This document shows, piece by piece, positions 10,084 through 61,234 of a DNA stretch of 64,000 bases (positions are counted from its first letter, which is position 1; every line of letters starts with the position of its first letter). The notes under the pieces were generated by a model. That model made no database searches and was not told the origin of the DNA. It was given only the letters and a program-made list of their open reading frames with translations. Position numbers and translations under genes: made by a program. The DNA lies in IMG/VR virus record IMGVR_UViG_3300023184_000025, positions 124,001-188,000 of that record. One strand, given 5' to 3'.

Positions 10084-10084
10084 T

Positions 10085-10723: not shown

Positions 10724-10730
10724 TCTTTAT

Positions 10731-11312: not shown

Positions 11313-11316
11313 ATTA

Positions 11317-11344
11317 TATTTACCATAATATACGTAGATAAATA
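11317..11344. promoter_or_regulatory. Back-to-back divergent late promoters (TAAATA minus 11322-11317; TAAATA plus 11339-11344)
   Basis: 4 and 5 nt from ATG 11312 and ATG 11350 respectively. Confidence 0.65.
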
Positions 11345-11349
11345 TTTCT

Positions 11350-12105: not shown

Positions 12106-12779
12106 TTCCAATTTTTATAGGGTATGACCCTAGAGAAGCAATTGCATTTCATACCTGTTCTAATAGTATTATTAGACATGCAACACAACCAGTGCAGATT
12201 ATTCCATTGGCATTAAACCTATTTAAAGACTACAAAGAAACACACACAGATGGCAGCAATCAATTTATCTATAGTAGATTTCTTGTGCCGCACTTGATGC
12301 AATTCAATGGATGGGCTATTTTTATAGACGGTGATATGGTTGTGCGTGACGACATTACTAAATTGTGGGAATTACAAAACCCCTATAAGGATGTATTGGT
12401 AGTCAAGCATGATTATAAAACAAAAATGTCTGAGAAATACCTTGGTTCAAAGAATGAAGACTATCCTAGAAAAAATTGGAGTAGTGTTATTTTATGGAAC
12501 TGTAATAGCTTTCCTAATCGTAAACTAACACCAGAATTTATACAAAAAGCCACAGGAGCCGAACTGCATCGATTTACCTGGATTGATGATAAACGCCTTG
12601 GTGAACTGCCACCTGAATGGAATTGGTTGCCCGATGAATACGGGCCAAACCCCGCGGCCAAGCTCTTGCACTATACCTTGGGCACTCCATGCTTCCACGA
12701 GTTTGCTGACACACCACAAGGCAACGAGTGGCACAGAGAACGCATACTCACTGAGTATTGTTTACAAAGGACACTATAA
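12102..12779 (+). CDS. GT-A glycosyltransferase (GT8-related)
   Basis: IFIGYDPRE, FIYSRFLVP, FIDGDM, PRKNWSSV, WNWL, LHYTLGTP. Confidence 0.82.
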   Translation: MIPIFIGYDPREAIAFHTCSNSIIRHATQPVQIIPLALNLFKDYKETHTDGSNQFIYSRFLVPHLMQFNGWAIFIDGDMVVRDDITKLWELQNPYKDVLVVKHDYKTKMSEKYLGSKNEDYPRKNWSSVILWNCNSFPNRKLTPEFIQKATGAELHRFTWIDDKRLGELPPEWNWLPDEYGPNPAAKLLHYTLGTPCFHEFADTPQGNEWHRERILTEYCLQRTL

Positions 12780-13588
12780 TGGGTAAGTGGTTATTTCTTA
12801 GCAAGAATGGCAAGGATGAATATATCAATATGTTTGCCGCGGGTTGTGGTGGGGAGATAACCAACTCCGACGACTTTGATTATTATTATGATGTATTAGT
12901 TGATGATAGACCCGTAGTACTGCGTGGAATTTTAAAACATAAAATTATGCGCAGTTGCTGGGAAGATAATAAAACATTCTATTACATGGACAGTGGCTAC
13001 TTTGGTAATCAACCCGGGCACCAGAATCCCCAAGGATGGAAGCTTTGGCACAGAATTGTAAAGAATGATCTTCAACACAACGAAATAGTTCCTAGGCCCG
13101 GTGATAGATGGAAAAAACTTCGAATTGACCTGGGTCCAAGAAGACATGGAAAAACAATAATTGTTGCGGCCCCCGATGAAAAACCTTGCAAGTTTTATGG
13201 AATTGATTTAGAAACCTGGCTCATTGAAACTGTGGAAACTTTAAAAAAATACACAGACCGGCCAATTATTATCAGACAACGTGAGCCAAAAAGAATAGAC
13301 CGTGTACAATTGAATCCATTATCTGCTATTTTGTCAAGAGATGTACATGCATTAGTAACATTTAACAGCGTTGCAGCCACAGAAGCAGTCATGCAGGGAA
13401 TTCCAGCATTTGTGTTGGCTCCATCAAATGCGGCAACGCCGGTTGGCAACACAGATCTGAGTAAGATCGAAACACCTTACTACCCCGATACAGATAAACT
13501 TCATGCCTGGGCTCATCATCTTGCATACGGACAGTTTCATGTGGATGAGTTACGAAATGGTACTGCATATAGGATTTTAACAACATGA
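12779..13588 (+). CDS. KpsS/capsule-synthesis-like GT-B transferase, paralog 1
   Basis: TAATG-coupled start; YYMDSGY, IIIRQR, LVTFNSVAATEAVMQGIPAFV. Confidence 0.65.
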   Translation: MGKWLFLSKNGKDEYINMFAAGCGGEITNSDDFDYYYDVLVDDRPVVLRGILKHKIMRSCWEDNKTFYYMDSGYFGNQPGHQNPQGWKLWHRIVKNDLQHNEIVPRPGDRWKKLRIDLGPRRHGKTIIVAAPDEKPCKFYGIDLETWLIETVETLKKYTDRPIIIRQREPKRIDRVQLNPLSAILSRDVHALVTFNSVAATEAVMQGIPAFVLAPSNAATPVGNTDLSKIETPYYPDTDKLHAWAHHLAYGQFHVDELRNGTAYRILTT

Positions 13589-14547
13589 AGGTTATAAGTT
13601 ATCTCTCAACCTTGCCTAAGAAACAAGAGCCTACACCTGAGTCTTTGCAAAAACAAAATAATAAGGCAAATACACTAAGATATTTTATCGACGGAGTAAT
13701 TAACGCTGGCGATGAAGGACAGGTGATTGAAACTATGCAATACGAACCAGCTGATGTTGCAATGATACTAGGCTGGGTTCACGAAAACGGTAAAACTGGT
13801 GCGCACCTGGCGTTCAGACAAGAAATCATCGATCGTCAAAAAGCCATTGGTGGTAGGACTGTTATTGCAGATAGCAATTTGTTTTTGTATAAAAATACTA
13901 CCAATCCTGGATACTGGTTGCGTTATAGCTACGATGGAGTTTTTCCAACCACTGGCGAATATTGCGATCATGAACCTGATCCAGTTAGATGGGAGATTAT
14001 AAAACAAGCCATTGGTGTTGAACTAAGTCCCTGGCGAAAAAATGGAGACCATATTTTGCTTTGCCTTCAACGAGATGGTGGTTGGAGTATGGCAGGGTGG
14101 AATGTGGTTGATTGGGCACTAAATGTCATAACAACATTAAGAAAGTTTACACAAAGAAGTATTCGTATAAGAGCCCACCCTGGCGATAAACGAGCAAAAA
14201 AATACTGCGATCGTCTACTAAAACTTTGTAGAGGAAGAGCATTGCTTAATGTTCATTTCAGCACCAATGAAAGATTAGAAGATGACCTTGGTCGATGTTG
14301 GGCCATGGTTAATCATAATAGTAGTCCTGCAGTTGCATCTGCATTACAGGGCATTCCGGTATTTGTTACTGATCCGGACCGAAGTCAGTGCAAAGAAATT
14401 GCCAATATCAATCTGGCAAATATAGAAAATCCTATTATATACGACCGAGAGTCGTGGATAAAACGCATAAGTCAATTCCACTGGAGCCATTCAGAACTTA
14501 AATCTGGGCATTGCTGGAGACACATGAAACGATGGGCTAACAAATGA
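13585..14547 (+). CDS. KpsS/capsule-synthesis-like GT-B transferase, paralog 2
   Basis: LLCLQRDG, IRIRAHPGD, VNHNSSPAVASALQGIPVFV. Confidence 0.65.
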   Translation: MKVISYLSTLPKKQEPTPESLQKQNNKANTLRYFIDGVINAGDEGQVIETMQYEPADVAMILGWVHENGKTGAHLAFRQEIIDRQKAIGGRTVIADSNLFLYKNTTNPGYWLRYSYDGVFPTTGEYCDHEPDPVRWEIIKQAIGVELSPWRKNGDHILLCLQRDGGWSMAGWNVVDWALNVITTLRKFTQRSIRIRAHPGDKRAKKYCDRLLKLCRGRALLNVHFSTNERLEDDLGRCWAMVNHNSSPAVASALQGIPVFVTDPDRSQCKEIANINLANIENPIIYDRESWIKRISQFHWSHSELKSGHCWRHMKRWANK

Positions 14548-15272
14548 TAGAAATTATTACTAGTTTTGATCAACGATATTATGATTTAATTGGTAAAGAC
14601 TGTGTTAATTCCTGGTTGAAACATTGGAATCCGTATTATAAACTCACTTGTTATGTTGAGGACTTTTCATTTTCTAATAATTACAGAATTAAACAAATAC
14701 AGTTCGATCAATTAGATCAGGACTATTACGCATTACAAAAAGAAGACTTTCATAGAAGCGTTAAAAGATTTTCAAAGAAGGCATATAGTTTTATCCATGC
14801 TATGAATAATACTGACCAACAGTGGATATTATGGATTGACGCAGATGTGATTACGGAAAGTACCATGCCGTGGGATTTTTGGAATAAAATTCTTAATCCG
14901 TCGCATTTATCTTTGTATTTGGGAGTATCATATACCGAAGATAAACAAGGTAATACAGGCAGTTGGCTAGTGCCCGAAACTGGAGTTTTTGCTGTTAATA
15001 CGCATCATCCAAAATTTAAATTATTTAAATCAGAATACACTCGTAGGTATAAGAAAAGAGACCATAAAGATCTCAGACGATTCTATGACAATGATGTATT
15101 TGGGGCGGCAATCAAATTGTCCAAGGCCGACTGCACTGATCTATGTGCTGACTTTGCTAAACCTTATAAAACACCCATGAGACATACTGTTCTCGGTCCA
15201 TATCTGACTCATCACAAAGCTAAACACAGTAAAGAACACTACAGTCAAACTGAGTTTGACGACGACCAATAA
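14544..15272 (+). CDS. GT-A nucleotide-diphospho-sugar transferase
   Basis: KKAYSFIHA, WILWIDADV (DxD), ETGVF, HHKAK. Confidence 0.75.
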   Translation: MIEIITSFDQRYYDLIGKDCVNSWLKHWNPYYKLTCYVEDFSFSNNYRIKQIQFDQLDQDYYALQKEDFHRSVKRFSKKAYSFIHAMNNTDQQWILWIDADVITESTMPWDFWNKILNPSHLSLYLGVSYTEDKQGNTGSWLVPETGVFAVNTHHPKFKLFKSEYTRRYKKRDHKDLRRFYDNDVFGAAIKLSKADCTDLCADFAKPYKTPMRHTVLGPYLTHHKAKHSKEHYSQTEFDDDQ

Positions 15273-16072
15273 GATTCACTTCTAGGACGTACCAAATCTT
15301 TAAGATTACTGCGTCCCGAGTCTTTACGTTTGCCTTTAAGATGGTCAAGATATGCGCCCCAGGGTGTATTAATCAATGGGTGCCCTTCGCCTTTGATCAA
15401 TCCCTTAGACCAATTTAGTTGTTTCCATTCTGGATACTTTACCTGTACTTCTTTGCGTGTTTCATCAAACACCCAGCAGTCGTTGTATTCTGCCATTGAC
15501 ATAACTCGGTCCGAGTCGTATGCCAACTGGAATTCTTTAAGCCATTCTTGTGTGGTTGAATTTTTTAAATTCATTGCATACAATCCACATTCTGTAAATT
15601 TCTTTTCACGACCTAAAAACGCCAGGCCGACATCTGCTGTAACTTGTTTGTTGATAAAATCTATTGTGATAGGAGTATGACATACCATGTCAGCATCCAT
15701 CCAAAACAATACATCAGCATTGGTATTTTTTGCGGCATGACACACTGAATAAATTTTATGGCTAAAACGAATTGCATCCCATCTAAATCCCAGGCCAGGG
15801 GCCTTGCCTTTGTGATCTACAGGACCTGTGGCAACTAAACCGTTGGCTCGTGGATCGTTACACCAACGCTGTTTAAATGCTACAATTTCTGGACTTGCGG
15901 CATGCAGGTCTCTCACATATAAGTTGGGTGCAGATTGTGTAATAGTGCAATCTTCTGTGTAAACATATAGGTCAACTTCTTGAGGCCAGTTTTGTAAAAA
16001 TGTATCAATCATGCGGCTGGCATATTTTTCATAACCGGCAGCATGAAATGTTGTTAGTACTGCGTATTTCAT
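15245..16072 (-). CDS. GT-A nucleotide-diphospho-sugar transferase (paralog of 14544-15272)
   Basis: RFSHKIYSVCHA, VLFWMDADM, ECGLY, DCWVFD, DHLKGKRK. Confidence 0.78.
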   Translation of the reverse strand: MKYAVLTTFHAAGYEKYASRMIDTFLQNWPQEVDLYVYTEDCTITQSAPNLYVRDLHAASPEIVAFKQRWCNDPRANGLVATGPVDHKGKAPGLGFRWDAIRFSHKIYSVCHAAKNTNADVLFWMDADMVCHTPITIDFINKQVTADVGLAFLGREKKFTECGLYAMNLKNSTTQEWLKEFQLAYDSDRVMSMAEYNDCWVFDETRKEVQVKYPEWKQLNWSKGLIKGEGHPLINTPWGAYLDHLKGKRKDSGRSNLKDLVRPRSESYWSSSNSV

Positions 16073-16785
16073 ATTGTTTTGTATATTTTGTTTTCTTTAT
16101 TGTTCCAATACTGATGGTCAGTAATTTGTTGTTTTATAATAGAGGTATCTATCTCATCAAGTGTTTGCTTTCTAGGAACATCTAAATCTAGATTGACCTG
16201 GTCTGGATGGAACCAAAATGCATTTACTGCCCTTGTGTCAAATGTAAAAAACTCATAACCATATTGTGACCACAAATCTTTGTACTTTGACAGTGAACAG
16301 CCATAATGAAACTTTCTATTGTATGTAACTTTTTTTATTGGATTTTCAACATAAGGAAAACTAGCCCAGTCGTTACCAAAGTTCTTGTTAATCTCGCAAC
16401 ACACGGTGGCTGGACGAAATCCCGATTGCAATAGGGCTGACGCTACTTCATAATCAAAACTGTCAATATCTAAACTAAAAAAGTCTGGTTGCTGGTACTG
16501 CTCGGGGATATACTGAGTTACGTTGTCTGGAGAAATCATTTTCTGTATTTTAATCAACTGATCAGGCCACCTTTCGGTCACTGATGAATTCCAGTCCCAG
16601 CCGTCTATGCCAACGCCGCAATACCCTTGATGTAGCAAGTCCAAAGTCATATTTTGTGTTCCATCGCCAAAACCAATCTCTACAAAAGTTTTTTTTGGGT
16701 CAGATATTCCAGCTAACATGTATTCAATAATCCCAGTCTCGGCATGTTGACTAAAACCTTGTCGTTCATACGGTAAATGTATCAT
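16069..16785 (-). CDS. FkbM/Methyltransf_21-like SAM methyltransferase
   Basis: ATGA-coupled start; FSQHAETGII, FVEIGFGDG, FFSLDIDSFDY, VNAFW. Confidence 0.75.
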   Translation of the reverse strand: MIHLPYERQGFSQHAETGIIEYMLAGISDPKKTFVEIGFGDGTQNMTLDLLHQGYCGVGIDGWDWNSSVTERWPDQLIKIQKMISPDNVTQYIPEQYQQPDFFSLDIDSFDYEVASALLQSGFRPATVCCEINKNFGNDWASFPYVENPIKKVTYNRKFHYGCSLSKYKDLWSQYGYEFFTFDTRAVNAFWFHPDQVNLDLDVPRKQTLDEIDTSIIKQQITDHQYWNNKENKIYKTI

Positions 16786-17429
16786 AATGGAGTCCATATT
16801 GTATTGCTCTTACTTTTAACTGGTGCGGCTTCATACGGGCCGCATAAATCATTGAGCCATTGCCTGTGTTGATCTTGCTGGCCGTTGTCCTCAATTAACA
16901 ACCAAGGTCTGTTGCGGCGTATAGTGTCACGACTTCCTTCAAGTACTGCATTTTCAAAACCCTCAACATCAATCTTGATCCAGTCCACAGATTGAAAATT
17001 GAATCGATCCAGCGTGGTCAACTCTCCAGTGTGTTGTTCAAACTCTGGGTTGGGCACAAACTCTGCCACTTGTTTGGTATGCCCACACTTGAGAGTTTGT
17101 AATTCAAATATTGCTGTTTGATCTCTATCGCCAAGACCCAAGTTATGCAATTCTACATTGTTATAATTTTCTAGATTTTTTTGCAGGACTTCAAAATTTT
17201 TAAGCACTGGTTCAAAACATACCACATGTTCAAACTGTTCAGCACTTGGTCTGGCAAATATACCAATGTTAGCACCAATATCAATCATTGTACGTTTTTG
17301 TGGAATATTATTATACACATAGTACCGGTAACGTTGTTGGTAATGTACATCTACAACATTTTGTAAACGCTCGCTGAAGAAACCATCAAGTGGTTCAGGA
17401 GAATACCAGAGTGAGTTAATTTTATACAT
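16782..17429 (-). CDS. FkbM family SAM methyltransferase
   Basis: IDIGANIG, VCFEP, LGLGD, DWIKIDVEGFE. Confidence 0.88.
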   Translation of the reverse strand: MYKINSLWYSPEPLDGFFSERLQNVVDVHYQQRYRYYVYNNIPQKRTMIDIGANIGIFARPSAEQFEHVVCFEPVLKNFEVLQKNLENYNNVELHNLGLGDRDQTAIFELQTLKCGHTKQVAEFVPNPEFEQHTGELTTLDRFNFQSVDWIKIDVEGFENAVLEGSRDTIRRNRPWLLIEDNGQQDQHRQWLNDLCGPYEAAPVKSKSNTIWTPL

Positions 17430-17430
17430 A

Positions 17431-17442
17431 TATAACTATTTA
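17431..17442. promoter_or_regulatory. Overlapping divergent late promoters in an 18-bp gap (TAAATA minus 17442-17437; TAACTA plus 17433-17438)
   Basis: 7 nt to ATG 17429 and 9 nt to ATG 17448; no SD on either side. Confidence 0.55.
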
Positions 17443-17447
17443 ACAAA

Positions 17448-18275
17448 ATGAAATTTAGTCTATTTAATAACTTTGGTGCGTTAAACTCTGCACCGGTATT
17501 TGCGGCCATAGAACAAGGTCTTAAATCTCTTGGCCATCAGGTAGTTCACAACGAATATGACGCAGATGCCGCTGTAATATGGTCGATGTTATGGACCGGT
17601 CGTATGCAAAGTAATCGAGAAGTTTGGAAAACATATCAAAACAAACCTATAATTGTTGCCGAAGTTGGAATGTTAGATCGAGGAAACACATGGAAAATTG
17701 GACTAAATGGTACCGGAGTATCTTGTTATAATTTCACTGATCTGATAGCATCAAGGGCAATAGATCTTGGATTAACATTGGCACCCTGGAGAACTGCTGG
17801 CGATCACATTGTGATTGCGCTACAACGTCAGGATAGTCAACAATGGTCTGGGCTACCGGATACACAAGCATGGGTTAATGATGTGTGCAATCGTTTAAAA
17901 AAATACACAGATCGCCCAATTGTTATTAGATCTCACCCAAGACAAAAAATAATACCAACAGCTATTTCCCCAAATAAGATTGCCAATTCGTACGATTGTT
18001 TTGATTTTAATCAATCATTAGAAAACGCATGGGCAGTTGTTAACTGGAGCAGTGGTCCTGGACCACAATCAATTATAAATGGTGTACCTGCATTTGTTGG
18101 CACAGATAGTCTGGCATCATTGGTTTCAACATTTAATCTAGCAGAAATAGAAAATCCGGCAATGCCGGATCGTAGTAGTTGGTTGAATATAATAGCACAT
18201 TCTGAATGGACACTAGACGAAATTGCGAGTGGTCATCCTATTCAAAGATTACTGCCTAGGTTGGTATCTCTGTAG
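17448..18275 (+). CDS. KpsS/capsule-synthesis-like GT-B transferase, paralog 3
   Basis: IVAEVG, IALQRQDS, IVIRSHPR, VVNWSSGPGPQSIINGVPAFV. Confidence 0.65.
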   Translation: MKFSLFNNFGALNSAPVFAAIEQGLKSLGHQVVHNEYDADAAVIWSMLWTGRMQSNREVWKTYQNKPIIVAEVGMLDRGNTWKIGLNGTGVSCYNFTDLIASRAIDLGLTLAPWRTAGDHIVIALQRQDSQQWSGLPDTQAWVNDVCNRLKKYTDRPIVIRSHPRQKIIPTAISPNKIANSYDCFDFNQSLENAWAVVNWSSGPGPQSIINGVPAFVGTDSLASLVSTFNLAEIENPAMPDRSSWLNIIAHSEWTLDEIASGHPIQRLLPRLVSL

Positions 18276-19226
18276 ATCTGCATTAACCATATCTTCAATC
18301 ATTTGTTTAAATGTTGTTTTTGGTTTCCAGTCCAATAGACTTCGAGCCCTGGTGCTGTCCCCGCATAGACTATATAATTCAGCAGGTCTTTTAAATCGTG
18401 GATCAGTTAGTACTTTGGATTCCCAGTTGGGAATATTAACATAATTAAACGCAACATCTAAAAGTTCTCGAATAGTATGTTGTTCGCCAGTGGCAATAAC
18501 ATAATCTTTGGCTTCATCTTGCTGTAACATTAGCCACATTGCTTCAACAAAGTCCCCGGCAAATCCCCAATCTCGGCGGCTGTCGATATTACCCAATGTA
18601 ATTGTTTCCTGCAATCCTAATTTAATACGTGCAACAGCATCTGTAACTTTGCGTGTAACAAATTCTTTTCCACGCAATGGACTTTCGTGATTGAATAACA
18701 CTCCTGAGCAAGCATAGAGACTATAACTTTCTCGAAAGTTCACAGTCATCCAGTGACTATACAGTTTACTAACCCCATACGGACTACGAGGAGTAAATGG
18801 GGTAGTTTCATTTTGTGTAGGTGTTGTGGCATTGCCAAACATTTCGCTGGTGCTTGCTTGATAAAAACGACTATTGGGACTATGTGTTTTAATTGCATTA
18901 AGAATATTAAGTGGACCCAATGAGTTGACTTCTGTAGTTAACTTATTCAAGTCCCAGCTAATTCCAACAAAGCTCTGAGCCGCAAGGTTATATATCTCTA
19001 CTGGTTTTAAACTTCTAAGTAGATGATTTATTGAATTTTCATCAGTGATATCACCTGTTACTAGTTCAATATCATTTTCAATTCCAAGCCATTTGATATT
19101 GTCAAGGTTTGGATTGCTATATCTTTTAACTAGTCCGTATACTTGATAATCTTTTTCAAGCAATAACTTTGCTAGGTACGGGCCATCTTGACCAGTCATT
19201 CCAGTGACAAAAGCAGTTTTTTTCAT
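18249..19226 (-). CDS. gmd: GDP-mannose 4,6-dehydratase
   Basis: TGMTGQDG, YNLAAQSFV, YQASTSEMFG, SPYGVSK, FNHESPLRG, FVTRK, RDWG. Confidence 0.95.
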   Translation of the reverse strand: MKKTAFVTGMTGQDGPYLAKLLLEKDYQVYGLVKRYSNPNLDNIKWLGIENDIELVTGDITDENSINHLLRSLKPVEIYNLAAQSFVGISWDLNKLTTEVNSLGPLNILNAIKTHSPNSRFYQASTSEMFGNATTPTQNETTPFTPRSPYGVSKLYSHWMTVNFRESYSLYACSGVLFNHESPLRGKEFVTRKVTDAVARIKLGLQETITLGNIDSRRDWGFAGDFVEAMWLMLQQDEAKDYVIATGEQHTIRELLDVAFNYVNIPNWESKVLTDPRFKRPAELYSLCGDSTRARSLLDWKPKTTFKQMIEDMVNADLQRYQPRQ

Positions 19227-19235
19227 TGTTTCCTC

Positions 19236-20000
19236 TTATTCTTTACCTAACCAGGTTAACGATTTATCAATCCAAGGTAGTGTTAGATCTCGTTGTTTTA
19301 CATGTCCATATTTGTTTATACTATCAACAGCAGTCACTGGCAATAACTTTGCCTCGGCTAATTCATACCAGGTAGTAGTTTTTGGATTTTTTGGAGATTG
19401 ATCGCTGTTATAAACAACCGCATGTAACCAAGGACTATCTGGCTGTTTTAAAAAATAGCCATCTCTGCAATCAAATCCTGAAACTGCCAGGGTATGTATT
19501 AAACTGACCATTGTCCAATTATAGTATTGGAAATCTAATTGATCAAACGCCTGTGCATTAAATTCCATATTGGTAGTCTGTGGTAACACTATGGCTAATG
19601 TGGCATTTGGGTGCATGGCCTTTTTCCAGTTGGCCAGTGTTTGAAACGGATTTATAACATACTGAAATGAGTCATGTGACCAAACTACATCAAACAATGT
19701 TTTGTGTATTGCAATTGGATCTTCAAAGTCTTGCCGTTGATATTGTGTATTGTGATATTTTTTAGTCATTGGGAACTGTTCAAATTGATCAATTCCGTAA
19801 CATTTAATATTTAAAGGGTCGGCACGTTCATCTCTGGTGGTTCTGGTAGCCCACCATTCAATGTCTAATCCACGTCCGCAACCCATGTCAACTACTGTGG
19901 CAATACTTTCCATAAAGTCATCATACGCATAAAACTGATTTAATGTTTGCAAACTATGTTGATGACTCTCTTCAGGGGAAATAAAATAAGTTTTGTTCAT
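19236..20000 (-). CDS. Class I SAM methyltransferase
   Basis: VVDMGCGRG, CYGID, FDVVWSHDSFQY. Confidence 0.8.
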   Translation of the reverse strand: MNKTYFISPEESHQHSLQTLNQFYAYDDFMESIATVVDMGCGRGLDIEWWATRTTRDERADPLNIKCYGIDQFEQFPMTKKYHNTQYQRQDFEDPIAIHKTLFDVVWSHDSFQYVINPFQTLANWKKAMHPNATLAIVLPQTTNMEFNAQAFDQLDFQYYNWTMVSLIHTLAVSGFDCRDGYFLKQPDSPWLHAVVYNSDQSPKNPKTTTWYELAEAKLLPVTAVDSINKYGHVKQRDLTLPWIDKSLTWLGKE

Positions 20001-52445: not shown

Positions 52446-53100
52446 CAAATTTTCTAAAATCGTAACAACTTACATTTCGATTGTTCTTCCACATGTCTGG
52501 CATATTTGTTTCTGTGCCAACTAATATGAACTGAGTTGTTTTATAAGCCGTAAACACTGAGTTAACATGTTCTTTCCAGGCAATTCTACCAGCTTGATTA
52601 TCAGTGTCATTGTTATATCCAAGTAAGAATACCTCGTTGTGGCCATCAAATGCCGCAATATAAACTGCCGCTGCCAATTCATCAAGCCGCCCAATGTGTG
52701 GCACTAGATAAAGTTTACCAGGGTACTTAGAAACATTTCTTGCTGTTGTATAAACAATATTCTGGTCAGAATATCCAGTTGCATCAATTTCTTGTAGATG
52801 ACTATCTTCTGAAGTGACATAAAAATCAAACTTCATTGACTTCCACAAGTCTCCTGATCCGTATGTCTGTAATTTTTTCTTTCCAAGTAATCCACCTTTG
52901 TGTTTTTCTAATTTTTTAAAATTAAATTGGTCCTGATCAAGTGCGCTGCCAATGACTGCGGCTCGACCTGAAATATGTTGGTTTTCAATTGGATTGGGTA
53001 ACCATTCTTTTGTTTGGTTTTTTTGATTTCCTGACCAGACTAAATTTGTAACTACAAATTCCCCAGTGTAATCTGCACGGTATCTATTAATAATGTTCAC
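52426..53100 (-). CDS. Maf/DUF115 (MptE-like) fold protein, possible glycosyltransferase
   Basis: RAAVIGS, QTYG, DFYVT, AAAVYIAAFDG.NEVFLLGYN pattern; GTGA-coupled to the fibre gene. Confidence 0.5.
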   Translation of the reverse strand: MNIINRYRADYTGEFVVTNLVWSGNQKNQTKEWLPNPIENQHISGRAAVIGSALDQDQFNFKKLEKHKGGLLGKKKLQTYGSGDLWKSMKFDFYVTSEDSHLQEIDATGYSDQNIVYTTARNVSKYPGKLYLVPHIGRLDELAAAVYIAAFDGHNEVFLLGYNNDTDNQAGRIAWKEHVNSVFTAYKTTQFILVGTETNMPDMWKNNRNVSCYDFRKFVSYCDV

Positions 53101-54689
53101 AAACGTCCTCCTATAACTTCAATTACCCCTGGTTCCGAACTTGAATAGTTTTCCAATGCTTTACCAATGATGCACCCTGGTTGATACTCAGCCAGATTTA
53201 ATTTTTTGGCAACTCCTGGAATATCGCTAGAAACTAGTCGATCTCCTTTTTTGATGTCGCCAACAACACGACAAGGAACTCGTCCTAGCAAAGCAACCAA
53301 AACTGCATTAGCATTATTTTCTCCGGCATTCATTATAAATGCAGGATTTGTGGAAATAATGCCGGCAACGGCTGGACTGCTAGAAACAGTGGTAATTGTT
53401 ACTTCAGCTTTGCCACCAAATTCAACAACTGTACCTGGTGGATAAATTTTATCAGCTACATATTTTTCTGCAACGTCAGCATACTGTGCAGATGTGGCCT
53501 TGGCAAATACTGTGTTGTAATATACACTTGAGCTACCAACATTACCGACGCCGTTGGCGTTGCTATTCACAATATTGCCACCAGTTATTGTGCCAGTTCC
53601 TACTGTTAATCCAGCAAAGGTTGGAGTACTGCCAGTTGTTAATCCTGAAATGTCTGCTTGTGCCAGCGTCACTGCACCGGTGCGACTGGCAACCGACGTT
53701 ACTTTGGCATCAGTGTACGTGGTACTGATACTAGATGCAGTCCAAGTTCCGCTAGTCAACGTACCAACACCAGTAATGTTGGTCTGTGACGCAGTGGTCA
53801 ATGTTCCCACAATGCTTGTGCCGCTTAGATTACCTGAAGTGATATTGCCTGTTACTGCCAATGATCCCAGTGTACCAACACCAGTAATGTTGGTCTGTGA
53901 CGCAGTGGTCAATGTTCCCACAATGCTTGTGCCGCTTAGATTACCTGAAGTGATATTGCCTGTTACTGCCAATGACGTCAATGTGCCCACTGATGTGATA
54001 TTTGTTTGTGCGGCTGTCTGTAAAGTACCTGTTAAGTTCGTTGCAACAACAGCAGTAGCACCAATATTGCCTACATTGGCATTGCCGCTAGCATTGAGTG
54101 TTCCAGTGATATTTGCACCAGTTGTTGATACAACAACCACGTTGCTGGTATTAGCAATGCCAACTGTGACATTGCCACCCGAGCTTACAACTCTGACATT
54201 ACTTGTACCACTTTGAATACTGGTTGCATCAATGCCAGTCAGTTGACTACCATTGCCCAAGATGTAACTGCCTGTGATGTTACCTGTTACACCAAGGGTA
54301 CCGGCAATGTTGGCACCTGTGGATGCTACAACAACTACGTTGCTGGTGCCTGCCACGCCTACAGTGACGTTGCCGCCTGAGCTGACCACTCTAACATTAC
54401 TTGTACCACTCTGGATGCTGGTTGCATCAATGCCTGTTAGCTGACTACCGTTGCCTAAAATATAGTTTCCCGACACGTTGCCAGTTACACTTAAACTTGT
54501 TCCGGTATATGTTTTGTTGGCTATAGTTTGAACACAATTTTGTCCAACTAAAGCAAACCCACCAAGGGTAGCACCATCAGCAATGCGCAACACATGAAGA
54601 TCTGTATCAACGGAAATTTCCCCGTTGGCTCCAAGAAAGTTATTATTTTGTACGGTTGTTCCTCGTCTAAATTGGACTACTGTTGGCAT
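53097..54689 (-). CDS. Tail fibre-like protein with QFRRG N-terminal anchor and C-terminal autocleaving chaperone (peptidase G2-like)
   Basis: MPTVVQFRRGTT; GNIT/GNLS repeats; SAQYADVAE..Y..GTVV..GG..EV, VALLGRVP, IIGKALE. Confidence 0.8.
   Translation of the reverse strand: MPTVVQFRRGTTVQNNNFLGANGEISVDTDLHVLRIADGATLGGFALVGQNCVQTIANKTYTGTSLSVTGNVSGNYILGNGSQLTGIDATSIQSGTSNVRVVSSGGNVTVGVAGTSNVVVVASTGANIAGTLGVTGNITGSYILGNGSQLTGIDATSIQSGTSNVRVVSSGGNVTVGIANTSNVVVVSTTGANITGTLNASGNANVGNIGATAVVATNLTGTLQTAAQTNITSVGTLTSLAVTGNITSGNLSGTSIVGTLTTASQTNITGVGTLGSLAVTGNITSGNLSGTSIVGTLTTASQTNITGVGTLTSGTWTASSISTTYTDAKVTSVASRTGAVTLAQADISGLTTGSTPTFAGLTVGTGTITGGNIVNSNANGVGNVGSSSVYYNTVFAKATSAQYADVAEKYVADKIYPPGTVVEFGGKAEVTITTVSSSPAVAGIISTNPAFIMNAGENNANAVLVALLGRVPCRVVGDIKKGDRLVSSDIPGVAKKLNLAEYQPGCIIGKALENYSSSEPGVIEVIGGRL
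53761..53975. repeat. Tandem direct repeat, period 111 nt (37 aa), about 100 nt identical
   Basis: Copies begin near 53761 and 53872. Confidence 0.9.
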
Positions 54690-56203: not shown

Positions 56204-59200
56204 TTATAGTCGACCTACCACAACTTCAATAACGCCTTCTGTGCCATTAAAGTCGGATAATGCCTTACCAATAACTGTACCAATCTGTGGACTTGTGCAA
56301 GCACAAGCACGACCGTCACCTGCAGAAATCATCATGTCACCTTTACGTACTGTGCCAACTACTTTGGTTGGAACACGACCGGTCAACGCAACAATTGCTG
56401 TGTATTCAGCTTCTAATCCTGAGTTCATGATGTAACTTGGATTTGTAGAAATAACACCTGCCACACTACTTGCGCCAGTGCCAGCTATGGTAACTTCTTT
56501 TGATCCGCCAAACATCATAACAGTACCCGGTTCATACGTAGCGTCTGATTCGTAGTACTCTGCCAAGTCAGCGTACTGAGCTGATGTTGCTTTGGCAAAC
56601 ACAGTATTAAAGTATGTTGTACTTGAACCAATATTACCAACACCGTTGGCGTTGCTATTTACAATGTTGCCACCAGTAATGGTTCCTGTACTGACACTCA
56701 GGTTACCACCAGTGATGTTGCCAGTAACTGTCAATGATCCCAGTGTACCAACTGAAGTAATGTTGGTTTGTGCCGCAGTGGTCAATGTTCCCACAATGTT
56801 GGTACCCGATAGGTTACCACCAGTGACGTTGCCAGATACACCAAGTCCACCTATGATAATAGCAGTACCTGTAGCGGTTGTAGTAGAAGTTGTGTTGGGT
56901 GCATTCAGCTTCATTGCCACGTTGGCTGCCATACTGCCAGCAACTGCAAATCTAATTTGTCCACCAATGTCAACAGCGCCAAGTACTAGATCACTTGGAT
57001 TACCTGCGGCCACATTACCTGTAACGTACAAATACGCATCATTAGGAGTAACTGAGGTACCCATGGCGTTGTTGAGAACTGCTGTGGCACCGTTATATGT
57101 GCTACTGGCAATACCAAAGTCAGCATAATATGTGGCGTCATTACCGTTGTTTGAAGTCAACACCCAGTCACTTGTGGCTGTGTTTCCTGCACTTTGGTTC
57201 TGATTGTTAATCTGAGCGTAGTCATCGTACTGTGATACAAAGTTGACCACAGACTGTGGTAGTATACTAAATCCAGCTGGCAGACCAGCGTACAAGGCAT
57301 TGAAACCAGTGGATGCATTACCAAAGAATTGACCTGAGTTACCAGATATCTGTTGGATGTTACCCGCAATGGTTGTTGTACCAGACACATACAAGTTACC
57401 AATTGTGGCATTACCTGTTGACATGGCAATGCCTCCTGGTGTAATATTACCAGTAACTGTCAATGAACCTAAAGTACCCACGGCAGTAATATTTGTCTGA
57501 CTTGCAGTGGTTAATGTTCCCACAATGTTGGTACCCGATAGGTTACCACCTGTGATGTTGCCAGATACACCTAGTGTACCAGTAATATTGGCTCCTGTGG
57601 AGGCAAATACTGCCACATTTGATGTAGCACCAATACTAACTGTGGCATTGCCGCCCGAGCTCACAACTTTAACATTACTTGTGCCACTTTGAATACTAGT
57701 TGCATCAATACCGGTTAGTTGACTACCATTACCTAGTACGTAGTTACCAGTGATGTTGCCTGTTGCAGTGATATAACCTGTGACATTGGCACCTGTACTA
57801 GTCACAACCGCAACGTTGGCTGTGCCAGCTGAGCTAACAGTGACGTTGCCACTGGCAAATGCTCTAACATTACTTGTACCATTCTGTATACTTGTGGCGT
57901 CAATACCAGTCAACAGACTACCATTACCTAGTACGTAGTTACCAGTGATGTTGCCTGTTGCAGTGATATAACCTGTGACGTTGGCACCGCCTGAGCTTAG
58001 AGTTTGTACTGTTGCACCTGCAATATTGGCACGAACGTTACCACCTGAAGTAAGCACAGATACTGCACTGGTACCGTTGGCAATGGTTGTTGTGTCAACG
58101 CTTGAGCTAGCAATGGTTGCAGGAGTTGTACCATCTGCGGCATAGAATGCCATTTGTCCATTCACTGCTTTGAGCTGTAGGTTGCCTAGGTAAATTGTGC
58201 TACCAGACACATACAAGCTATTCCACCAGCTTGTTGCATTGCCCAATGAGAACGTTGCATTGGCTGTTGGCAAAATATTACCTGTGGCTGAAAGTGTTCC
58301 CTGGCCGTCAACTGCCTCAAGAATTGCAGAACCTGTGGCATTTTGAAGTGCTGTAACTGTGGTTGTAGTTGTTAAAATACGTGCATCAATCACGTCTGTT
58401 GTCAACGGAGCTTCAGTGAATGTCAGCACATTGCCTGTTACAGAATAAGCACTGGTTGGAATCTGTACAACGCCGTTGATTGCAACAATAGTACTGGCAG
58501 TTGTGGAATTTTCACTGAGTACAAACGCTGTTTGGCTGTTAGTCCCGTTGAATTGATCAGAAACAACAACAGTAAATGTTGTACCTGCTGACGTCCACTT
58601 GGAGTTGTCATAGTACTCTAAACTGTTAGATGATGTGTTAAAACGCATCATACCAGTTACACCACTACCTGGACGCTGTAGTGTATTACCCACTGGCATA
58701 ACAATACTAGTTGCAGAATTAAATGCCACTAAGGCATTAACTGTTTGAGTTGCATTTCCAAAGCTGGCTGTGTTTGCTCCGGCATCCACATAAAATACAT
58801 TGGCGGCACCACCATTCACTGCAAAGTCAACGTCGCCCAGGGCTGTGTTAAAGTTTACTCGTCCATTTGTGTCAGTAATGTTATCACCACTGATTTGAAT
58901 GTTGCCTATGTTGGCTTGGCCAGCTGTGGTAATGTTACCGCCAGTGATGTTACCAGTTACACCCAGTGTACCTACAACAGTACCGTTGCCGGTTACTGCC
59001 AGTGTAGCAATATTGGCAATACCTGCTGTGGTTACGTTACCACCAGTGATGTTACCAGTTACACCCAGTGTGCCTACAACAGTACCATTGCCGGTTACTG
59101 CCAGTGTGCCAATGTTGGCAATACCTGCTGTGGTTACGTTACCACCAGTGATGTTGCCTGTGGCCACAATCAAACCAGCTGTGCCTAGGTTACCCACATT

Positions 59201-61234
59201 GGCATTGCCTGTTACACCCAGTGTGCCTACAACAGTACCATTGCCGGTTACTGCCAGTGTGCCAATGTTGGCAATACCTGCTGTGGTTACGTTACCACCT
59301 GTAATGTTACCAGTTACTGATGCTGTTCCTGTGACTTCTAGTGTGCCAATGTTGGCTGTGCCTACTGTGTTTACGTTACCGCCTTTGAGGTTTCCAGTTA
59401 CGTCCAAGCTTGTGCCAGTTGCAACACCAATGTTTGGTGTTGTTAAGTTTGCACTGGCCTTGACAATGATATTGCCGCTGCCATCAAATGCTGTGGTATT
59501 TTGATCAACCTTGGCGCTGAATGTTGTGCTGTTTAATACCAAACCAGCACTGGTGTTGGCTGTGTAGGTCTGTGAACTTGAGAACTGAGCAAAAGTAATA
59601 TTGCTTGTACCAAAAGTAATAACTCCTGGAGGTGCGTCAACAATATATGCAGAACCTTTATTGACATCACCACTCTGTACAAAGAAGTAGTCGTTGATGC
59701 TCAAGTCTGTTGTGCTGTTAGGACCATATGTGTCTGCGTCTGTTGTTCTAGTGATAACAGTTGCGCTGGTGTATTGATATATACCATTTTGTGTGGCGTC
59801 AGCCTGGTCCTTGACCAGGATACGTGTGCCAGCTGTGGCAACGTTGGCAGTATCAATTAAGGTAAATGTACCTGTTGTGGTTAATGTTGCACCAACACCA
59901 GCTGTACCGTTGTTGTAGGTAATGGTGCCACCTGTGGCTGCGGCCAGGTTACCTGTTGTGGCTGCCACTACAGCGGCGTGATATGCCAACTGAGTTGACA
60001 CCATGTTGTCAACATAGACTTTGGATGCGGCATCGTTGGCTTGAACAGGCTGACTCAATCCATTGATGTATGTGCTATTGAGAACAATGTTGCCTGATGT
60101 TGGAGACAAGTTTATGTCGCCAGTGGCTGTGCTAACAGTAATGCCTGATGCTCCACGTACCACTGCTGTGTTTACGTTACCACCGTTGACATTGCCAGTT
60201 GTGGAAATAACACCAGCACCTGCTGATATATTACCACCGGTGATGTTGCCTGTTACGCCTAATGTTGTGGTAACTGTGGCTGCACCAGTCACTGCTAGTG
60301 TGCCAACGTTGGCTATGCCTGCTGTGGTCAAGTTACCACCAGTTACATTACCTGTGGCTGTGATAAAGCCACTAGTGCCTAGGTTGCCAACGTTGGCATT
60401 GCCTGATACACTTAAAGTTACACCTACTACTGCGGCATTGCTGACCAAGTTGCCGCCGGTAATATTACCTGTAGCATTGATTTGCCCGGTAGTTGATAAG
60501 TTTCCAGCTGATAAATTTCCAGTTAGTGTAGTTGATCCAGTAACTGCCAGATTGCCAACATTGGCTGTGCCTGTTGTGGTCAAATTGCCACCGGTGATGT
60601 TGCCAGTTACACCCAGTGTGCCTGCAACAGTACCATTACCTGTCACGGCCAGTGTGCCAATATTGGCTGTACCTGTTGTGGTTACGTTACCACCAGTTAC
60701 ATTACCTGGAGTTGAAATGTTGGCAGCAACTATGTTACCTGTGAAGTTTGTTACATTGCCAACGATGTTGCCTTGAAATTCTGATGTTCCGATTACAATC
60801 AAGTTAGCGCCAATGTTGGCATTGCCCGCACCGGTAAAATTGAATGTTTTCAAACTGGCATAACTTGCGACAGTGACAGTGGTATTGGTTACTTCACTGC
60901 TGGTGTAAACAGTTTCAAACTGACCAGCTGATTCTTTCCAGACAAATGCAATATTTGTACTATTACCGCGTTTGCCAATAAAACCAATATCCAGTGAAGG
61001 AGCACCAGTTTGATTGTCTGCCAATAGTAATATTGGATCTTGAATACTGACATTAACTGTGTCAATTGTGGTAGTTGTACCGTTAACTGTTAAGTTGCCC
61101 GAAACAGTAAGATCACTACCATAGGTAATATTATTGGCAAGTTTTTGTGAGGTTATTGAATAGCTAACCAGCTTAACGTTAGCATCAATGGTTGAATCAG
61201 TAATCTGATTATTTTTAATTCTGGTTACGGCCAT
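56204..61234 (-). CDS. Giant tail fibre/adhesin-like protein (1676 aa) with C-terminal autocleaving chaperone
   Basis: Dense GNITGGN/GNANVG repeats; SAQYADLAEYY, VALTGRVP, VIGKAL. Confidence 0.85.
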   Translation of the reverse strand: MAVTRIKNNQITDSTIDANVKLVSYSITSQKLANNITYGSDLTVSGNLTVNGTTTTIDTVNVSIQDPILLLADNQTGAPSLDIGFIGKRGNSTNIAFVWKESAGQFETVYTSSEVTNTTVTVASYASLKTFNFTGAGNANIGANLIVIGTSEFQGNIVGNVTNFTGNIVAANISTPGNVTGGNVTTTGTANIGTLAVTGNGTVAGTLGVTGNITGGNLTTTGTANVGNLAVTGSTTLTGNLSAGNLSTTGQINATGNITGGNLVSNAAVVGVTLSVSGNANVGNLGTSGFITATGNVTGGNLTTAGIANVGTLAVTGAATVTTTLGVTGNITGGNISAGAGVISTTGNVNGGNVNTAVVRGASGITVSTATGDINLSPTSGNIVLNSTYINGLSQPVQANDAASKVYVDNMVSTQLAYHAAVVAATTGNLAAATGGTITYNNGTAGVGATLTTTGTFTLIDTANVATAGTRILVKDQADATQNGIYQYTSATVITRTTDADTYGPNSTTDLSINDYFFVQSGDVNKGSAYIVDAPPGVITFGTSNITFAQFSSSQTYTANTSAGLVLNSTTFSAKVDQNTTAFDGSGNIIVKASANLTTPNIGVATGTSLDVTGNLKGGNVNTVGTANIGTLEVTGTASVTGNITGGNVTTAGIANIGTLAVTGNGTVVGTLGVTGNANVGNLGTAGLIVATGNITGGNVTTAGIANIGTLAVTGNGTVVGTLGVTGNITGGNVTTAGIANIATLAVTGNGTVVGTLGVTGNITGGNITTAGQANIGNIQISGDNITDTNGRVNFNTALGDVDFAVNGGAANVFYVDAGANTASFGNATQTVNALVAFNSATSIVMPVGNTLQRPGSGVTGMMRFNTSSNSLEYYDNSKWTSAGTTFTVVVSDQFNGTNSQTAFVLSENSTTASTIVAINGVVQIPTSAYSVTGNVLTFTEAPLTTDVIDARILTTTTTVTALQNATGSAILEAVDGQGTLSATGNILPTANATFSLGNATSWWNSLYVSGSTIYLGNLQLKAVNGQMAFYAADGTTPATIASSSVDTTTIANGTSAVSVLTSGGNVRANIAGATVQTLSSGGANVTGYITATGNITGNYVLGNGSLLTGIDATSIQNGTSNVRAFASGNVTVSSAGTANVAVVTSTGANVTGYITATGNITGNYVLGNGSQLTGIDATSIQSGTSNVKVVSSGGNATVSIGATSNVAVFASTGANITGTLGVSGNITGGNLSGTNIVGTLTTASQTNITAVGTLGSLTVTGNITPGGIAMSTGNATIGNLYVSGTTTIAGNIQQISGNSGQFFGNASTGFNALYAGLPAGFSILPQSVVNFVSQYDDYAQINNQNQSAGNTATSDWVLTSNNGNDATYYADFGIASSTYNGATAVLNNAMGTSVTPNDAYLYVTGNVAAGNPSDLVLGAVDIGGQIRFAVAGSMAANVAMKLNAPNTTSTTTATGTAIIIGGLGVSGNVTGGNLSGTNIVGTLTTAAQTNITSVGTLGSLTVTGNITGGNLSVSTGTITGGNIVNSNANGVGNIGSSTTYFNTVFAKATSAQYADLAEYYESDATYEPGTVMMFGGSKEVTIAGTGASSVAGVISTNPSYIMNSGLEAEYTAIVALTGRVPTKVVGTVRKGDMMISAGDGRACACTSPQIGTVIGKALSDFNGTEGVIEVVVGRL
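58941..59310. repeat. Near-identical 102-nt (34-aa) tandem repeats in the fibre gene; further copy near 60590-60705
   Basis: Unit GNITGGNVTTAGIANIGTLAVTGNGTVVGTLGVT; copies at 58941 and 59043, third after a short insert. Confidence 0.9.

What the first reader, a model, noticed from the sequence alone, without database searches (positions are those of the whole stretch)
56204..61234. Extreme N-x-S/T density in fibres: glycosylation sequons or an ordered Thr/Asn surface
Seen: the 34-aa repeat alone has three sequons (NIT, NVT, NGT), and NIT/NVT/NLS/NLT recur throughout all fibre genes. Known: cytoplasmic HMW1C-type enzymes glycosylate adhesins at N-x-S/T, and regular Thr/Asn arrays on beta-solenoids can bind ice or surfaces. 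Inference: either a heavily N-glycosylated fibre primed by an unrecognised transferase (no HMW1C homolog seen here) or a structural Asn/Thr ladder.
Basis: partly seen in the sequence, partly recalled or inferred. Interest (0 to 1): 0.6.

Follow-up and report, generated by a model that had tools for sequence, protein, structure and literature searches.

The report
Asn/Thr-rich triple beta-helix phage fibre
The many N-x-S/T "sequons" in this 1676-residue tail fibre of a freshwater jumbo phage are real, but they are best explained as a by-product of a 17-residue structural repeat that builds a three-chain beta-helix, not as sites selected for N-glycosylation.

Summary
The ORF at 56204-61234 (-) has 77 N-x-S/T sites against 44 expected from its composition (z 6). 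That is 4.6 per 100 aa, against 0.87 genome-wide and 1.2-2.1 in T4 fibres.

The excess does not behave like a selected sequon:
- It is all N-x-T (62 vs 30). N-x-S is at expectation.
- In 120 homologues the reversed pattern is equally enriched (1.35 vs 1.30).
- The 99%-invariant Asn of the core motif TGN[IV]TGGN[LIV]xT has S/T at +2 in only 27% of copies.
- Thr at +2 is not commoner when Asn is present.
- In alignable domains, sequon Asn are less conserved than other Asn.

A three-copy model gives an intertwined trimer (ipSAE 0.91, best control 0.00) with a 17-residue turn. One hydrophobic residue per side faces in, Gly sits at the corners, and Asn/Thr flank the core residue. The C-terminus folds like the phi29 gp12 autochaperone.

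No GT41/HMW1C, STT3 or GT9 is found in the phage or in nine relatives.

Verdict: an ordinary structural ladder, a new member of a known kind.

The parts
56204..61234 (-). Whole fibre gene, 1676 aa (P0001): alternating beta-helical shafts and globular domains
   Evidence: ORF list and translation. It lies in the tail module of a T4-like jumbo phage: gp15 tail sheath stabiliser at 50635-52017, tail sheath at 38472-41852. More than 2600 homologues occur in metagenomes.
60815..61234 (-). N-terminal attachment region, residues 1-140
   Evidence: Conserved at 47-91% identity in 101 homologues. Has 8 sequons vs 3.7 expected, but sequon Asn are less conserved (0.55) than other Asn (0.82).
60125..60814 (-). 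Shaft A, residues 141-370: repeats of the motif TGN[IV]TGGN[LIV]xT
   Evidence: 16 sequons vs 8.4 expected. Motif instances are listed. Autocorrelation peaks at lags 17 and 34.
59435..60124 (-). Globular domain 1, residues 371-600
   Evidence: Matches tail-fibre proteins of Limnohabitans and Roseobacter phages at 41-42% identity. 9 sequons vs 5.1 expected. Joint conservation of N and S/T is about the product of the two single frequencies.
58865..59434 (-). Shaft B, residues 601-790: the 34-aa repeat, equal to two 17-residue turns
   Evidence: TRF period 102 nt. The trimer model is an intertwined triple beta-helix. The monomer model is a beta-solenoid. 12 N-x-T vs 5.4 expected and 0 N-x-S.
58115..58864 (-). 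Globular domain 2, residues 791-1040
   Evidence: Sequons at expectation (7 vs 5.8).
57335..58114 (-). 56-aa repeats with the GNGSxLTGI motif plus shaft, residues 1041-1300
   Evidence: Sequence match to the PBCV-1 fibre protein P22 (Vp260), PDB 8h2i chain cU, E 7e-8. The paper describes those fibres as right-handed parallel beta-helix trimers like T4 gp34 (PMC9617893). 16 sequons vs 8.3 expected.
56855..57334 (-). Globular domain 3, residues 1301-1460
   Evidence: Sequons at expectation (3 vs 3.4).
56645..56854 (-). Shaft C, residues 1461-1530
   Evidence: Three motif instances. 5 sequons vs 2.9 expected.
56204..56644 (-). C-terminal beta-tulip domain, residues 1531-1676, a likely intramolecular trimerisation chaperone
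   Evidence: phrog_22593. AF2 model pLDDT 81, above 90 over the domain. Foldseek matches phi29 gp12 pre-mature form and C-terminal fragment (3suc, 3gqh) with prob 1.00 and TM about 0.5. 75% mean column identity in 35 homologues. 1 sequon vs 1.0 expected.
53097..54689 (-). Second fibre gene (530 aa) with an Mtd_N N-terminus, the same repeats and the same C-terminal domain
   Evidence: Pfam Mtd_N and phrog_22593. 19 sequons vs 11.2 expected, z 2.8. Perfect 111-nt tandem duplication at 53761-53975.
8576..20000 (.). Sugar-nucleotide, glycosyltransferase and methyltransferase cluster. It is a candidate, untested source of any virion glycan and is not adjacent to the fibres.
   Evidence: GT17-like 9292-10083(-). 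Methyltransf_24 at 10085-10723(-) and 10731-11387(-). RfaE-domain-II-like nucleotidyltransferase plus cupin 11350-12105(+). GT8 12102-12779(+). Weak DUF6716 match 12758-13588(+). FkbM methyltransferase 16782-17429(-). GDP-mannose 4,6-dehydratase 18249-19226(-), 404 bits. Methyltransferase 19236-20000(-).

Best explanation
The gene encodes a long tail fibre of a 345 kb T4-like freshwater jumbo phage. Its shafts are built from a 17-residue repeat with family consensus T-G-N-[VI]-T-G-G-N-[LIV]-x-T-[GA]-G-x-[VI]-[ST]-A. Three chains wind around one axis as a triple beta-helix. Each side puts one large hydrophobic residue (positions 4, 9 and 15) into the core and has Gly or another small residue at the corners (positions 2, 6, 7, 11, 13, 17). 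The residues next to each core residue (N3, T5, N8, x10, x14, S16) alternate to the outside. N-h-T is therefore the natural outward-inward-outward triplet of this repeat, with Asn following the corner Gly and beta-branched Thr favoured in the strand. This yields many N-x-T strings without any selection for a glycosylation sequon. A C-terminal domain like the phi29 gp12 autochaperone probably nucleates trimerisation. What is shown: the counts, the motif statistics, the predicted trimer and the fold matches. What is inferred: the side-chain orientation (no coordinates were available), the chaperone function, and the absence of modification.
For: 1) Direction and residue tests. N-x-T is 62 vs 29.8 but N-x-S is 15 vs 14.5, and the reverse [ST]-x-N is also enriched, 62 vs 44. 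Across 120 homologues the median obs/exp is 1.30 for N-x-S/T, 1.35 for [ST]-x-N, 1.52 for N-x-T, 1.37 for T-x-N and 0.97 for N-x-S.
2) Motif profile over 1556-1635 distinct repeat contexts. The Asn of GGN is 99% invariant, yet its +2 position is the most variable in the repeat (entropy 3.0) and is S/T in only 27%. For the first Asn (84%), S/T at +2 is not more frequent when Asn is present (73%) than when it is absent (86%).
3) Alignable domains. Sequon Asn conservation is 0.49 and 0.55, against 0.70 and 0.82 for other Asn. The joint N+S/T frequency is about the product of the single frequencies.
4) Structure. Three copies of residues 585-800 score ipSAE 0.91 with best of 3 controls 0.00. That mark was reached by 20 of 30 proteins solved as pairs of one chain and 1 of 23 solved as single chains. 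The runs agree in at least 98% of contacts and partner pLDDT is at least 92. There are about 1500 inter-chain contacts, nearly every residue from 42 to 186 is involved, and residue i of one chain touches i+6 of the next. The lowest-error contacts are the hydrophobic positions (V662/V668/V674, L723/I729, I689/I695).
5) Periodicity at lags 17, 34 and 51.
6) The C-terminal domain matches the phi29 gp12 C-terminal autochaperone.
7) The PBCV-1 fibre proteins P22 and P23, described as beta-helix trimers, are the only solved fibre proteins among the weak sequence matches in the PDB.
8) No GT41, STT3 or GT9 in the 99%-complete genome, and no GT41 in nine relatives.
Against: In this protein the forward pattern (obs/exp 1.75) is more enriched than the reverse (1.41), and it lies at the upper end of its family (4.6 vs a median of 3.3 per 100 aa). 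S/T at the variable +2 position of GGN is 11 of 15 here against 27% family-wide, though four of these copies are recent duplicates. By alternation the Asn are probably solvent-exposed, so they could be modified. The phage and all nine related records examined carry sugar-nucleotide enzymes, and the phage carries at least four glycosyltransferase-like genes whose substrates are unknown. The PBCV-1 fibre protein that shares the 56-aa repeats comes from a virus that glycosylates its virion proteins. The AF2 monomer model gives a single-chain solenoid instead (pLDDT 75), and the trimer score is a model's own confidence obtained with my own alignment. Glycan shields need not be positionally conserved, so the weak site conservation is not decisive.
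Confidence: 0.75

Rival explanations
1. Sequon-directed cytoplasmic N-glycosylation: an HMW1C-like or unrecognised enzyme of the host or phage puts hexoses on many of the 77 N-x-S/T Asn, as on the HMW1 adhesin.
For: The count exceeds composition and survives repeat masking. The Asn are probably exposed. The predicted fold class is that of beta-helical adhesins, including the HMW1 secretion domain and hyperglycosylated TibA, though these are generic solenoid matches at Z about 11.6.
Against: No GT41 in the phage or in nine relatives. N-x-S is not enriched, and the reverse pattern is as enriched family-wide. The invariant Asn lacks S/T at +2 in 73% of copies, and Asn and S/T are not coupled. Sequon Asn are less conserved than other Asn. 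Only 3 sites fit the extended D/E-x-N-x-S/T form. The host is unknown.
Confidence: 0.06
2. The phage's own sugar kit (GDP-mannose dehydratase, epimerase, nucleotidyltransferase, GT17-like, GT8, GT2, GT1-like, several methyltransferases) glycosylates the fibre on its exposed Thr/Ser or Asn without using the classical sequon. Chloroviruses do this for capsid and fibre proteins, and mycobacteriophages for capsid and tail tube.
For: The cluster lies in the same window, and a second sugar locus lies at G000 323.5-325.7 kb. All 9 related phage records examined carry at least one GDP-mannose-dehydratase-family (SDR) gene. Repeats are shared with the PBCV-1 fibre protein P22/Vp260. Phage virion glycosylation has precedent (Freeman et al. 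2023, as cited in PMC12619734).
Against: No link between the cluster and the fibres was found. The cluster is about 36 kb away and separated from the structural module by recombination and ssDNA-binding genes. No GT lies next to the fibre gene in relatives. Such kits in phages are usually read as host-surface or DNA modification. Co-occurrence within one lineage may simply be shared ancestry.
Confidence: 0.12
3. The ordered outward rows of Asn and Thr are themselves functional, as an ice-binding or polysaccharide-binding surface along the shaft.
For: N3, T5 and N8 are regularly spaced on a predicted rigid beta-helix. Weak structural matches to MpAFP and the Lolium ice-binding protein. The phage comes from lake water.
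Against: The ice-binding matches are generic for any solenoid and rank below many unrelated beta-helices. T-x-T is at expectation, 1.0-1.1. Outward positions 10 and 14 are highly variable, so the face is not uniform. There is no sign of a cold-restricted distribution.
Confidence: 0.05
4. Structural rival: each chain forms its own right-handed three-sided beta-solenoid (as in tapirin or two-partner-secretion adhesins), and three solenoids associate side by side rather than intertwining.
For: The AF2 monomer model has pLDDT 75 and pTM 0.60. It superposes on tapirin C-terminal domains at rmsd 2.2 A over 156-159 residues, Z 14-15.
Against: The trimer model is much more confident (pLDDT 93 vs 75). 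Nearly every residue contacts another chain, with an offset of about 6 residues. The fibre has a phi29 gp12-like C-terminal chaperone, typical of intertwined trimers. The related PBCV-1 fibres are beta-helix trimers.
Confidence: 0.12

Closest known systems
Triple beta-helix shafts of phage fibres and spikes (T4 gp34, gp12, gp5 C-terminus; phi29 gp12)
   Same: Predicted intertwined homotrimer. Short repeat with one inward hydrophobic residue per side and Gly at the corners. C-terminal domain with the fold of the phi29 gp12 autochaperone. Located in a T4-like tail module.
   Different: The repeat is 17 residues per turn (6+6+5) with an invariant GGN. No Pfam or NCBIfam model covers it. T4 fibres have a third of the sequon density and no excess over composition.
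PBCV-1 (chlorovirus) fibre proteins P22/Vp260 and P23, PDB 8h2i
   Same: Significant sequence match of the 56-aa GNGSxLTGI repeats (E 7e-8), and a weak match of the 17-residue repeat profile to P23 (E 0.0025). These proteins are described as right-handed parallel beta-helix trimers. PBCV-1 is a freshwater virus that also encodes its own sugar enzymes (chlorovirus GMD: from my knowledge, not tested here).
   Different: PBCV-1 is a eukaryotic giant virus. Only the capsid-proximal 4 nm of its fibres is resolved, so the matching repeats have no solved coordinates. Its N-glycans use non-classical sequons.
HMW1 adhesin with the HMW1C/NGT cytoplasmic N-glycosylation system
   Same: A long beta-helical, Asn/Thr-rich surface protein with many N-x-S/T sites. 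Generic fold match to the HMW1 secretion domain.
   Different: No GT41 enzyme in the phage or its relatives. The sequon shows no sign of being the unit of selection. The protein is a virion component, not a secreted protein.
Glycosylated virions of mycobacteriophages (Freeman et al. 2023, cited in PMC12619734)
   Same: A tailed phage carrying its own glycosyltransferases.
   Different: There the glycans are O-linked on C-terminal extensions of the capsid and tail-tube subunits, not on fibres, and the GT genes sit close to the structural genes. Nothing here links the GTs to the fibre.

Membership tests
Triple beta-helix phage fibre | Homotrimer in which the three chains intertwine around a common axis | tested here: met
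   Prediction only. ipSAE 0.91 against best control 0.00; the mark was reached by 20 of 30 known one-chain pairs and 1 of 23 single chains. Contacts agree at 98% or more and pLDDT is 92 or more. There are about 1500 contacts with an i to i+6 offset.
Triple beta-helix phage fibre | Short sequence repeat with periodic inward hydrophobic residues and small residues at the corners | tested here: met
   17-residue profile: hydrophobic at positions 4, 9 and 15; Gly/Ala/Thr at 2, 6, 7, 11, 13 and 17. Lags 17, 34 and 51.
Triple beta-helix phage fibre | C-terminal intramolecular chaperone that is cleaved off after folding | tested here: inconclusive
   The fold matches the phi29 gp12 C-terminal fragment (3gqh, 3suc; prob 1.00, TM about 0.5). 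No Peptidase_S74 or G2 Pfam hit. Cleavage cannot be tested.
HMW1C/NGT-type N-glycosylated adhesin | A GT41 N-glycosyltransferase encoded with or available to the substrate | tested here: not met
   PF13844 has no match at E<=1 in the 99%-complete phage genome and none at E<=0.01 in nine related records. The host genome is unknown.
HMW1C/NGT-type N-glycosylated adhesin | N-x-S/T acts as the unit: both S and T are used, and Asn and the hydroxy residue are conserved together | tested here: not met
   N-x-S is at expectation. No positive coupling in the repeat or in the alignable domains.
HMW1C/NGT-type N-glycosylated adhesin | Hexose attached to Asn | not testable with these tools
   Needs mass spectrometry.
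Periplasmic OST (PglB/STT3) N-glycosylation | STT3 enzyme and the extended D/E-x-N-x-S/T sequon on a secreted protein | tested here: not met
   No PF02516 match. Only 3 extended sequons. Virions assemble in the cytoplasm (general knowledge).
Autotransporter heptosylation (TibC/AAH type) | GT9-like heptosyltransferase | tested here: not met
   No PF01075 match. An RfaE-domain-II-like nucleotidyltransferase is present but scores far below the equivalog cut-off (77 vs 181 bits).
Ice-binding beta-solenoid | Flat, regular T-x-T or T-x-N arrays on one face, with ice-binding activity | tested here: inconclusive
   T-x-T is at expectation and T-x-N is 1.4-1.6 fold enriched. Fold matches are generic. 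Activity cannot be tested.
Virus-encoded virion glycosylation (chlorovirus or mycobacteriophage type) | The virus encodes glycosyltransferases and sugar-nucleotide enzymes | tested here: met
   GT17-like, GT8, GT2, GT1-like, GDP-mannose 4,6-dehydratase, an epimerase and methyltransferases. At least one GDP-mannose-dehydratase-family (SDR) gene in 9 of 9 relatives.
Virus-encoded virion glycosylation (chlorovirus or mycobacteriophage type) | Glycan shown on a virion protein | not testable with these tools
   No virion preparation or proteomic data. No RNA run holds the gene.

The most novel reading that the evidence does not exclude
The lineage-conserved kit of sugar-nucleotide enzymes, glycosyltransferases and methyltransferases decorates the exposed Asn/Thr rows of these triple beta-helix fibres, much as chloroviruses glycosylate their capsid and fibre proteins. 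That would be the first glycosylated tail fibre of a tailed phage, possibly with a new cytoplasmic Asn- or Thr-directed transferase.
Probability: 0.12. Interest if true: 0.75.

Novelty: new member of a known kind. Interest (0 to 1): 0.3.

Why it matters
The result shows that a striking density of N-x-S/T in a phage fibre can arise purely from the outward-inward-outward pattern of a beta-helical repeat. It also gives simple sequence tests that separate such cases from selected glycosylation sites: N-x-S against N-x-T, the reversed pattern, coupling of Asn with S/T, and conservation of sequon Asn against other Asn. In addition it defines a 17-residue repeat, present in thousands of metagenomic fibre proteins of large freshwater phages, that no Pfam or NCBIfam model matched in this protein. 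If the minority reading were true, it would extend virus-encoded protein glycosylation to the fibres of tailed phages.

Tried and rejected
- Megablast of the gene against 50,697 phage records found nothing. tblastn matched only single domains at 32-44% identity.
- Pfam gave nothing for P0001 and NCBIfam nothing for its C-terminal 177 residues. PHROGs matched only the C-terminal domain, to a family of unknown function.
- A profile of the repeat against PDB sequences gave only weak or spurious hits (armadillo designs, MinC) apart from PBCV-1 P23.
- The ESM Atlas feature search gave only generic beta-helix look-alikes below 0.9.
- Foldseek on the monomer shaft model found nothing at E<=0.001. The left-handed hexapeptide enzymes that top the VIA list have rmsd about 11 A, and I do not take them as the fold.
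- My first repeat masking by self-BLAST masked nothing. I replaced it with a sliding-window mask.
- A 626-aa ORF beside the second sugar locus, the size of an NGT, turned out to be a B12-binding radical SAM protein.
- I could not measure Asn burial, because neither structure tool returns coordinates. The orientation is inferred from strand alternation.
- I did not try to identify the host.
Full report
**What is there.** The coordinates 56204-61234 are exactly one minus-strand ORF of 1676 aa.
- The window is bases 124001-188000 of a 345,154-bp IMG/VR virus record estimated 99% complete.
- Around the gene lie T4-like tail and head genes: large terminase, tail tube, tail sheath, gp15 sheath stabiliser and several fibre-like ORFs.
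- Near-identical DNA occurs in lake and freshwater metagenomes from at least four studies.
- No close relative is in the phage collection. However, more than 2600 homologues exist in metagenomic protein sets, many on contigs of 300-420 kb.
- Relatives keep the same gene order around the fibre gene.

**Checking the observation.**
- The protein has 77 N-x(not P)-S/T sites against 44.0 expected from its own composition (5000 shuffles, sd 5.4, maximum 67, z 6.1).
- Density is 4.6 per 100 aa, against 0.87 for 408 ORFs of the genome. T4 gp34, gp37 and gp12 have 1.2-2.1 per 100 aa and sit at their composition expectation.
- Masking every 17-aa window that is at least 50% identical to an earlier one still leaves 33 vs 21 (z 3.2). 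So the excess is not only a recent duplication counted many times.
- The 34-aa repeat with NIT, NVT and NGT is real.
- The excess lies in the N-terminus, the three larger shaft regions and, weakly, domain 1. Shaft C, domains 2 and 3 and the C-terminal domain are at expectation.
- Of the neighbouring fibre ORFs, only 53097-54689 is enriched beyond composition. A second fibre cluster elsewhere in the genome is also enriched.

**Does the excess behave like a sequon?** It does not, on five counts.
- It is entirely N-x-T (62 vs 29.8). N-x-S is 15 vs 14.5.
- The reversed pattern [ST]-x-N is also enriched (62 vs 44), while adjacent N-[ST] and [ST]-N are depleted. This is the signature of polar-hydrophobic-polar alternation in beta-strands.
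- Over 120 homologues the median obs/exp is 1.30 for N-x-S/T and 1.35 for the reverse. It is 1.52 for N-x-T, 1.37 for T-x-N and 0.97 for N-x-S.
- Forty-three of the 77 sites follow a Gly and belong to variants of one motif, TGN[IV]TGGN[LIV]xT. In about 1600 distinct family copies of this motif, the second Asn is 99% invariant. Yet its +2 position is the most variable of the repeat and is S/T in only 27%. For the first Asn (84%), S/T at +2 occurs in 73% of copies with Asn and 86% of copies without it.
- In the alignable N-terminal region and domain 1, sequon Asn are less conserved (0.55, 0.49) than other Asn (0.82, 0.70). The joint frequency of N and S/T is about the product of the two single frequencies.

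**Structure.**
- AlphaFold2 on residues 585-800 as a single chain gives an all-beta solenoid (pLDDT 75). It resembles right-handed beta-helices such as tapirin (rmsd 2.2 A over about 158 residues, Z 14-15). More loosely it resembles adhesin and ice-binding solenoids.
- Three copies give a far more confident model:
  - ipSAE is 0.91 against 0.00 for the best of three controls. That mark was reached by 20 of 30 proteins solved as pairs of one chain and 1 of 23 solved as single chains.
  - The runs agree in at least 98% of contacts, and pLDDT is at least 92.
  - Nearly every residue from 42 to 186 touches another chain, and residue i of one chain touches i+6 of the next. The best-defined contacts are Val, Leu and Ile at a spacing of about 6 residues.
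- This is an intertwined triple beta-helix with a 17-residue turn per chain, consistent with identity peaks at lags 17, 34 and 51.
- In the family profile, positions 4, 9 and 15 are hydrophobic, and positions 2, 6, 7, 11, 13 and 17 are Gly, Ala or Thr. The flanking positions 3, 5, 8, 10, 14 and 16 are polar or variable.
- By strand alternation, the Asn and Thr of N-h-T face outward. This orientation is inferred, not measured, because no coordinates were returned.
- The last 146 residues fold like the phi29 gp12 C-terminal autochaperone and related beta-tulip proteins.
- The 56-aa repeats match the PBCV-1 fibre protein P22/Vp260. That paper describes its fibres as beta-helix trimers like T4 gp34.

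**Transferases.**
- No GT41 (HMW1C type), STT3 or GT9 is found in six-frame searches of the genome. No GT41 is found in nine related phage records.
It contains a GT17-like gene, a GT8 gene, an RfaE-domain-II-like nucleotidyltransferase fused to a cupin, GDP-mannose 4,6-dehydratase, and FkbM and other methyltransferases.
- Elsewhere there are a GT2 gene and an epimerase plus a GT1-like gene.
- All nine related records examined carry at least one GDP-mannose-dehydratase-family (SDR) gene.
- Nothing ties these genes to the fibres. They are about 36 kb away, beyond recombination and ssDNA-binding genes, and no GT neighbours the fibre gene in relatives.

**Verdict.**
- The density of N-x-S/T is real and above chance. 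It is best explained as a consequence of a 17-residue triple-beta-helix repeat in which Asn and Thr flank the inward hydrophobic residue.
- Sequon-directed N-glycosylation has no positive support. It cannot be excluded from sequence alone, because the Asn are probably exposed and the phage has glycosyltransferases of unknown target.
- Ice binding has no specific support.
- The fibre is a new member of a known kind. The repeat was not matched by any Pfam or NCBIfam model in this protein, although it is abundant in freshwater jumbo-phage metagenomes.

Noticed in passing
window 8576-20000: A cluster of sugar-nucleotide, glycosyltransferase and methyltransferase genes: GT17-like, GT8, RfaE-domain-II-like nucleotidyltransferase plus cupin, GDP-mannose 4,6-dehydratase at 404 bits, FkbM and three other methyltransferases, and several unannotated 240-320 aa ORFs. 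The target is unknown (virion, DNA or host surface).
   Followed up: partly
window 53761-53975 (inside ORF 53097-54689, minus strand): A perfect 111-nt tandem duplication (1.9 copies, 100% matches) and a 198-nt repeat at 54115-54490 in the neighbouring fibre gene. These suggest very recent repeat expansion in the fibre shafts.
   Followed up: no
window 57335-58114 (residues 1041-1300): The 56-aa repeats with GNGSxLTGI match the fibre protein P22/Vp260 of the chlorovirus PBCV-1 (PDB 8h2i, E 7e-8). A fibre repeat is therefore shared between freshwater jumbo phages and a freshwater giant virus of algae.
   Followed up: partly
G000:C1:35687-40766 (outside the window): A second fibre cluster: a 1219-aa protein with the same GNGSxLTG repeats and a Gly-rich stretch (43 sequons vs 25 expected, with N-x-S also enriched), plus a 210-aa protein (11 vs 4.2).
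   Followed up: partly
G000:C1:321028-325738 (L013): A 626-aa B12-binding radical SAM protein, an NAD-dependent epimerase/dehydratase and a GT1-like glycosyltransferase lie side by side. This is a second sugar-modification locus.
   Followed up: partly
G000:C1:75119-80594 (L014): Host-like metabolic genes in the phage: a sodium:dicarboxylate symporter (219 bits), a family-3 solute-binding protein, a GT2 glycosyltransferase, a metallophosphoesterase and a fatty-acid desaturase.
   Followed up: no
window 54725-56131 (minus strand): A 468-aa fibre-like ORF with a weak, below-threshold match to the endosialidase catalytic domain (PF12219, 18 bits vs cut-off 25) and matches to head-decoration and tail-fibre PHROGs. 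It may be a tailspike-like protein. Its sequon count is at composition.
   Followed up: no
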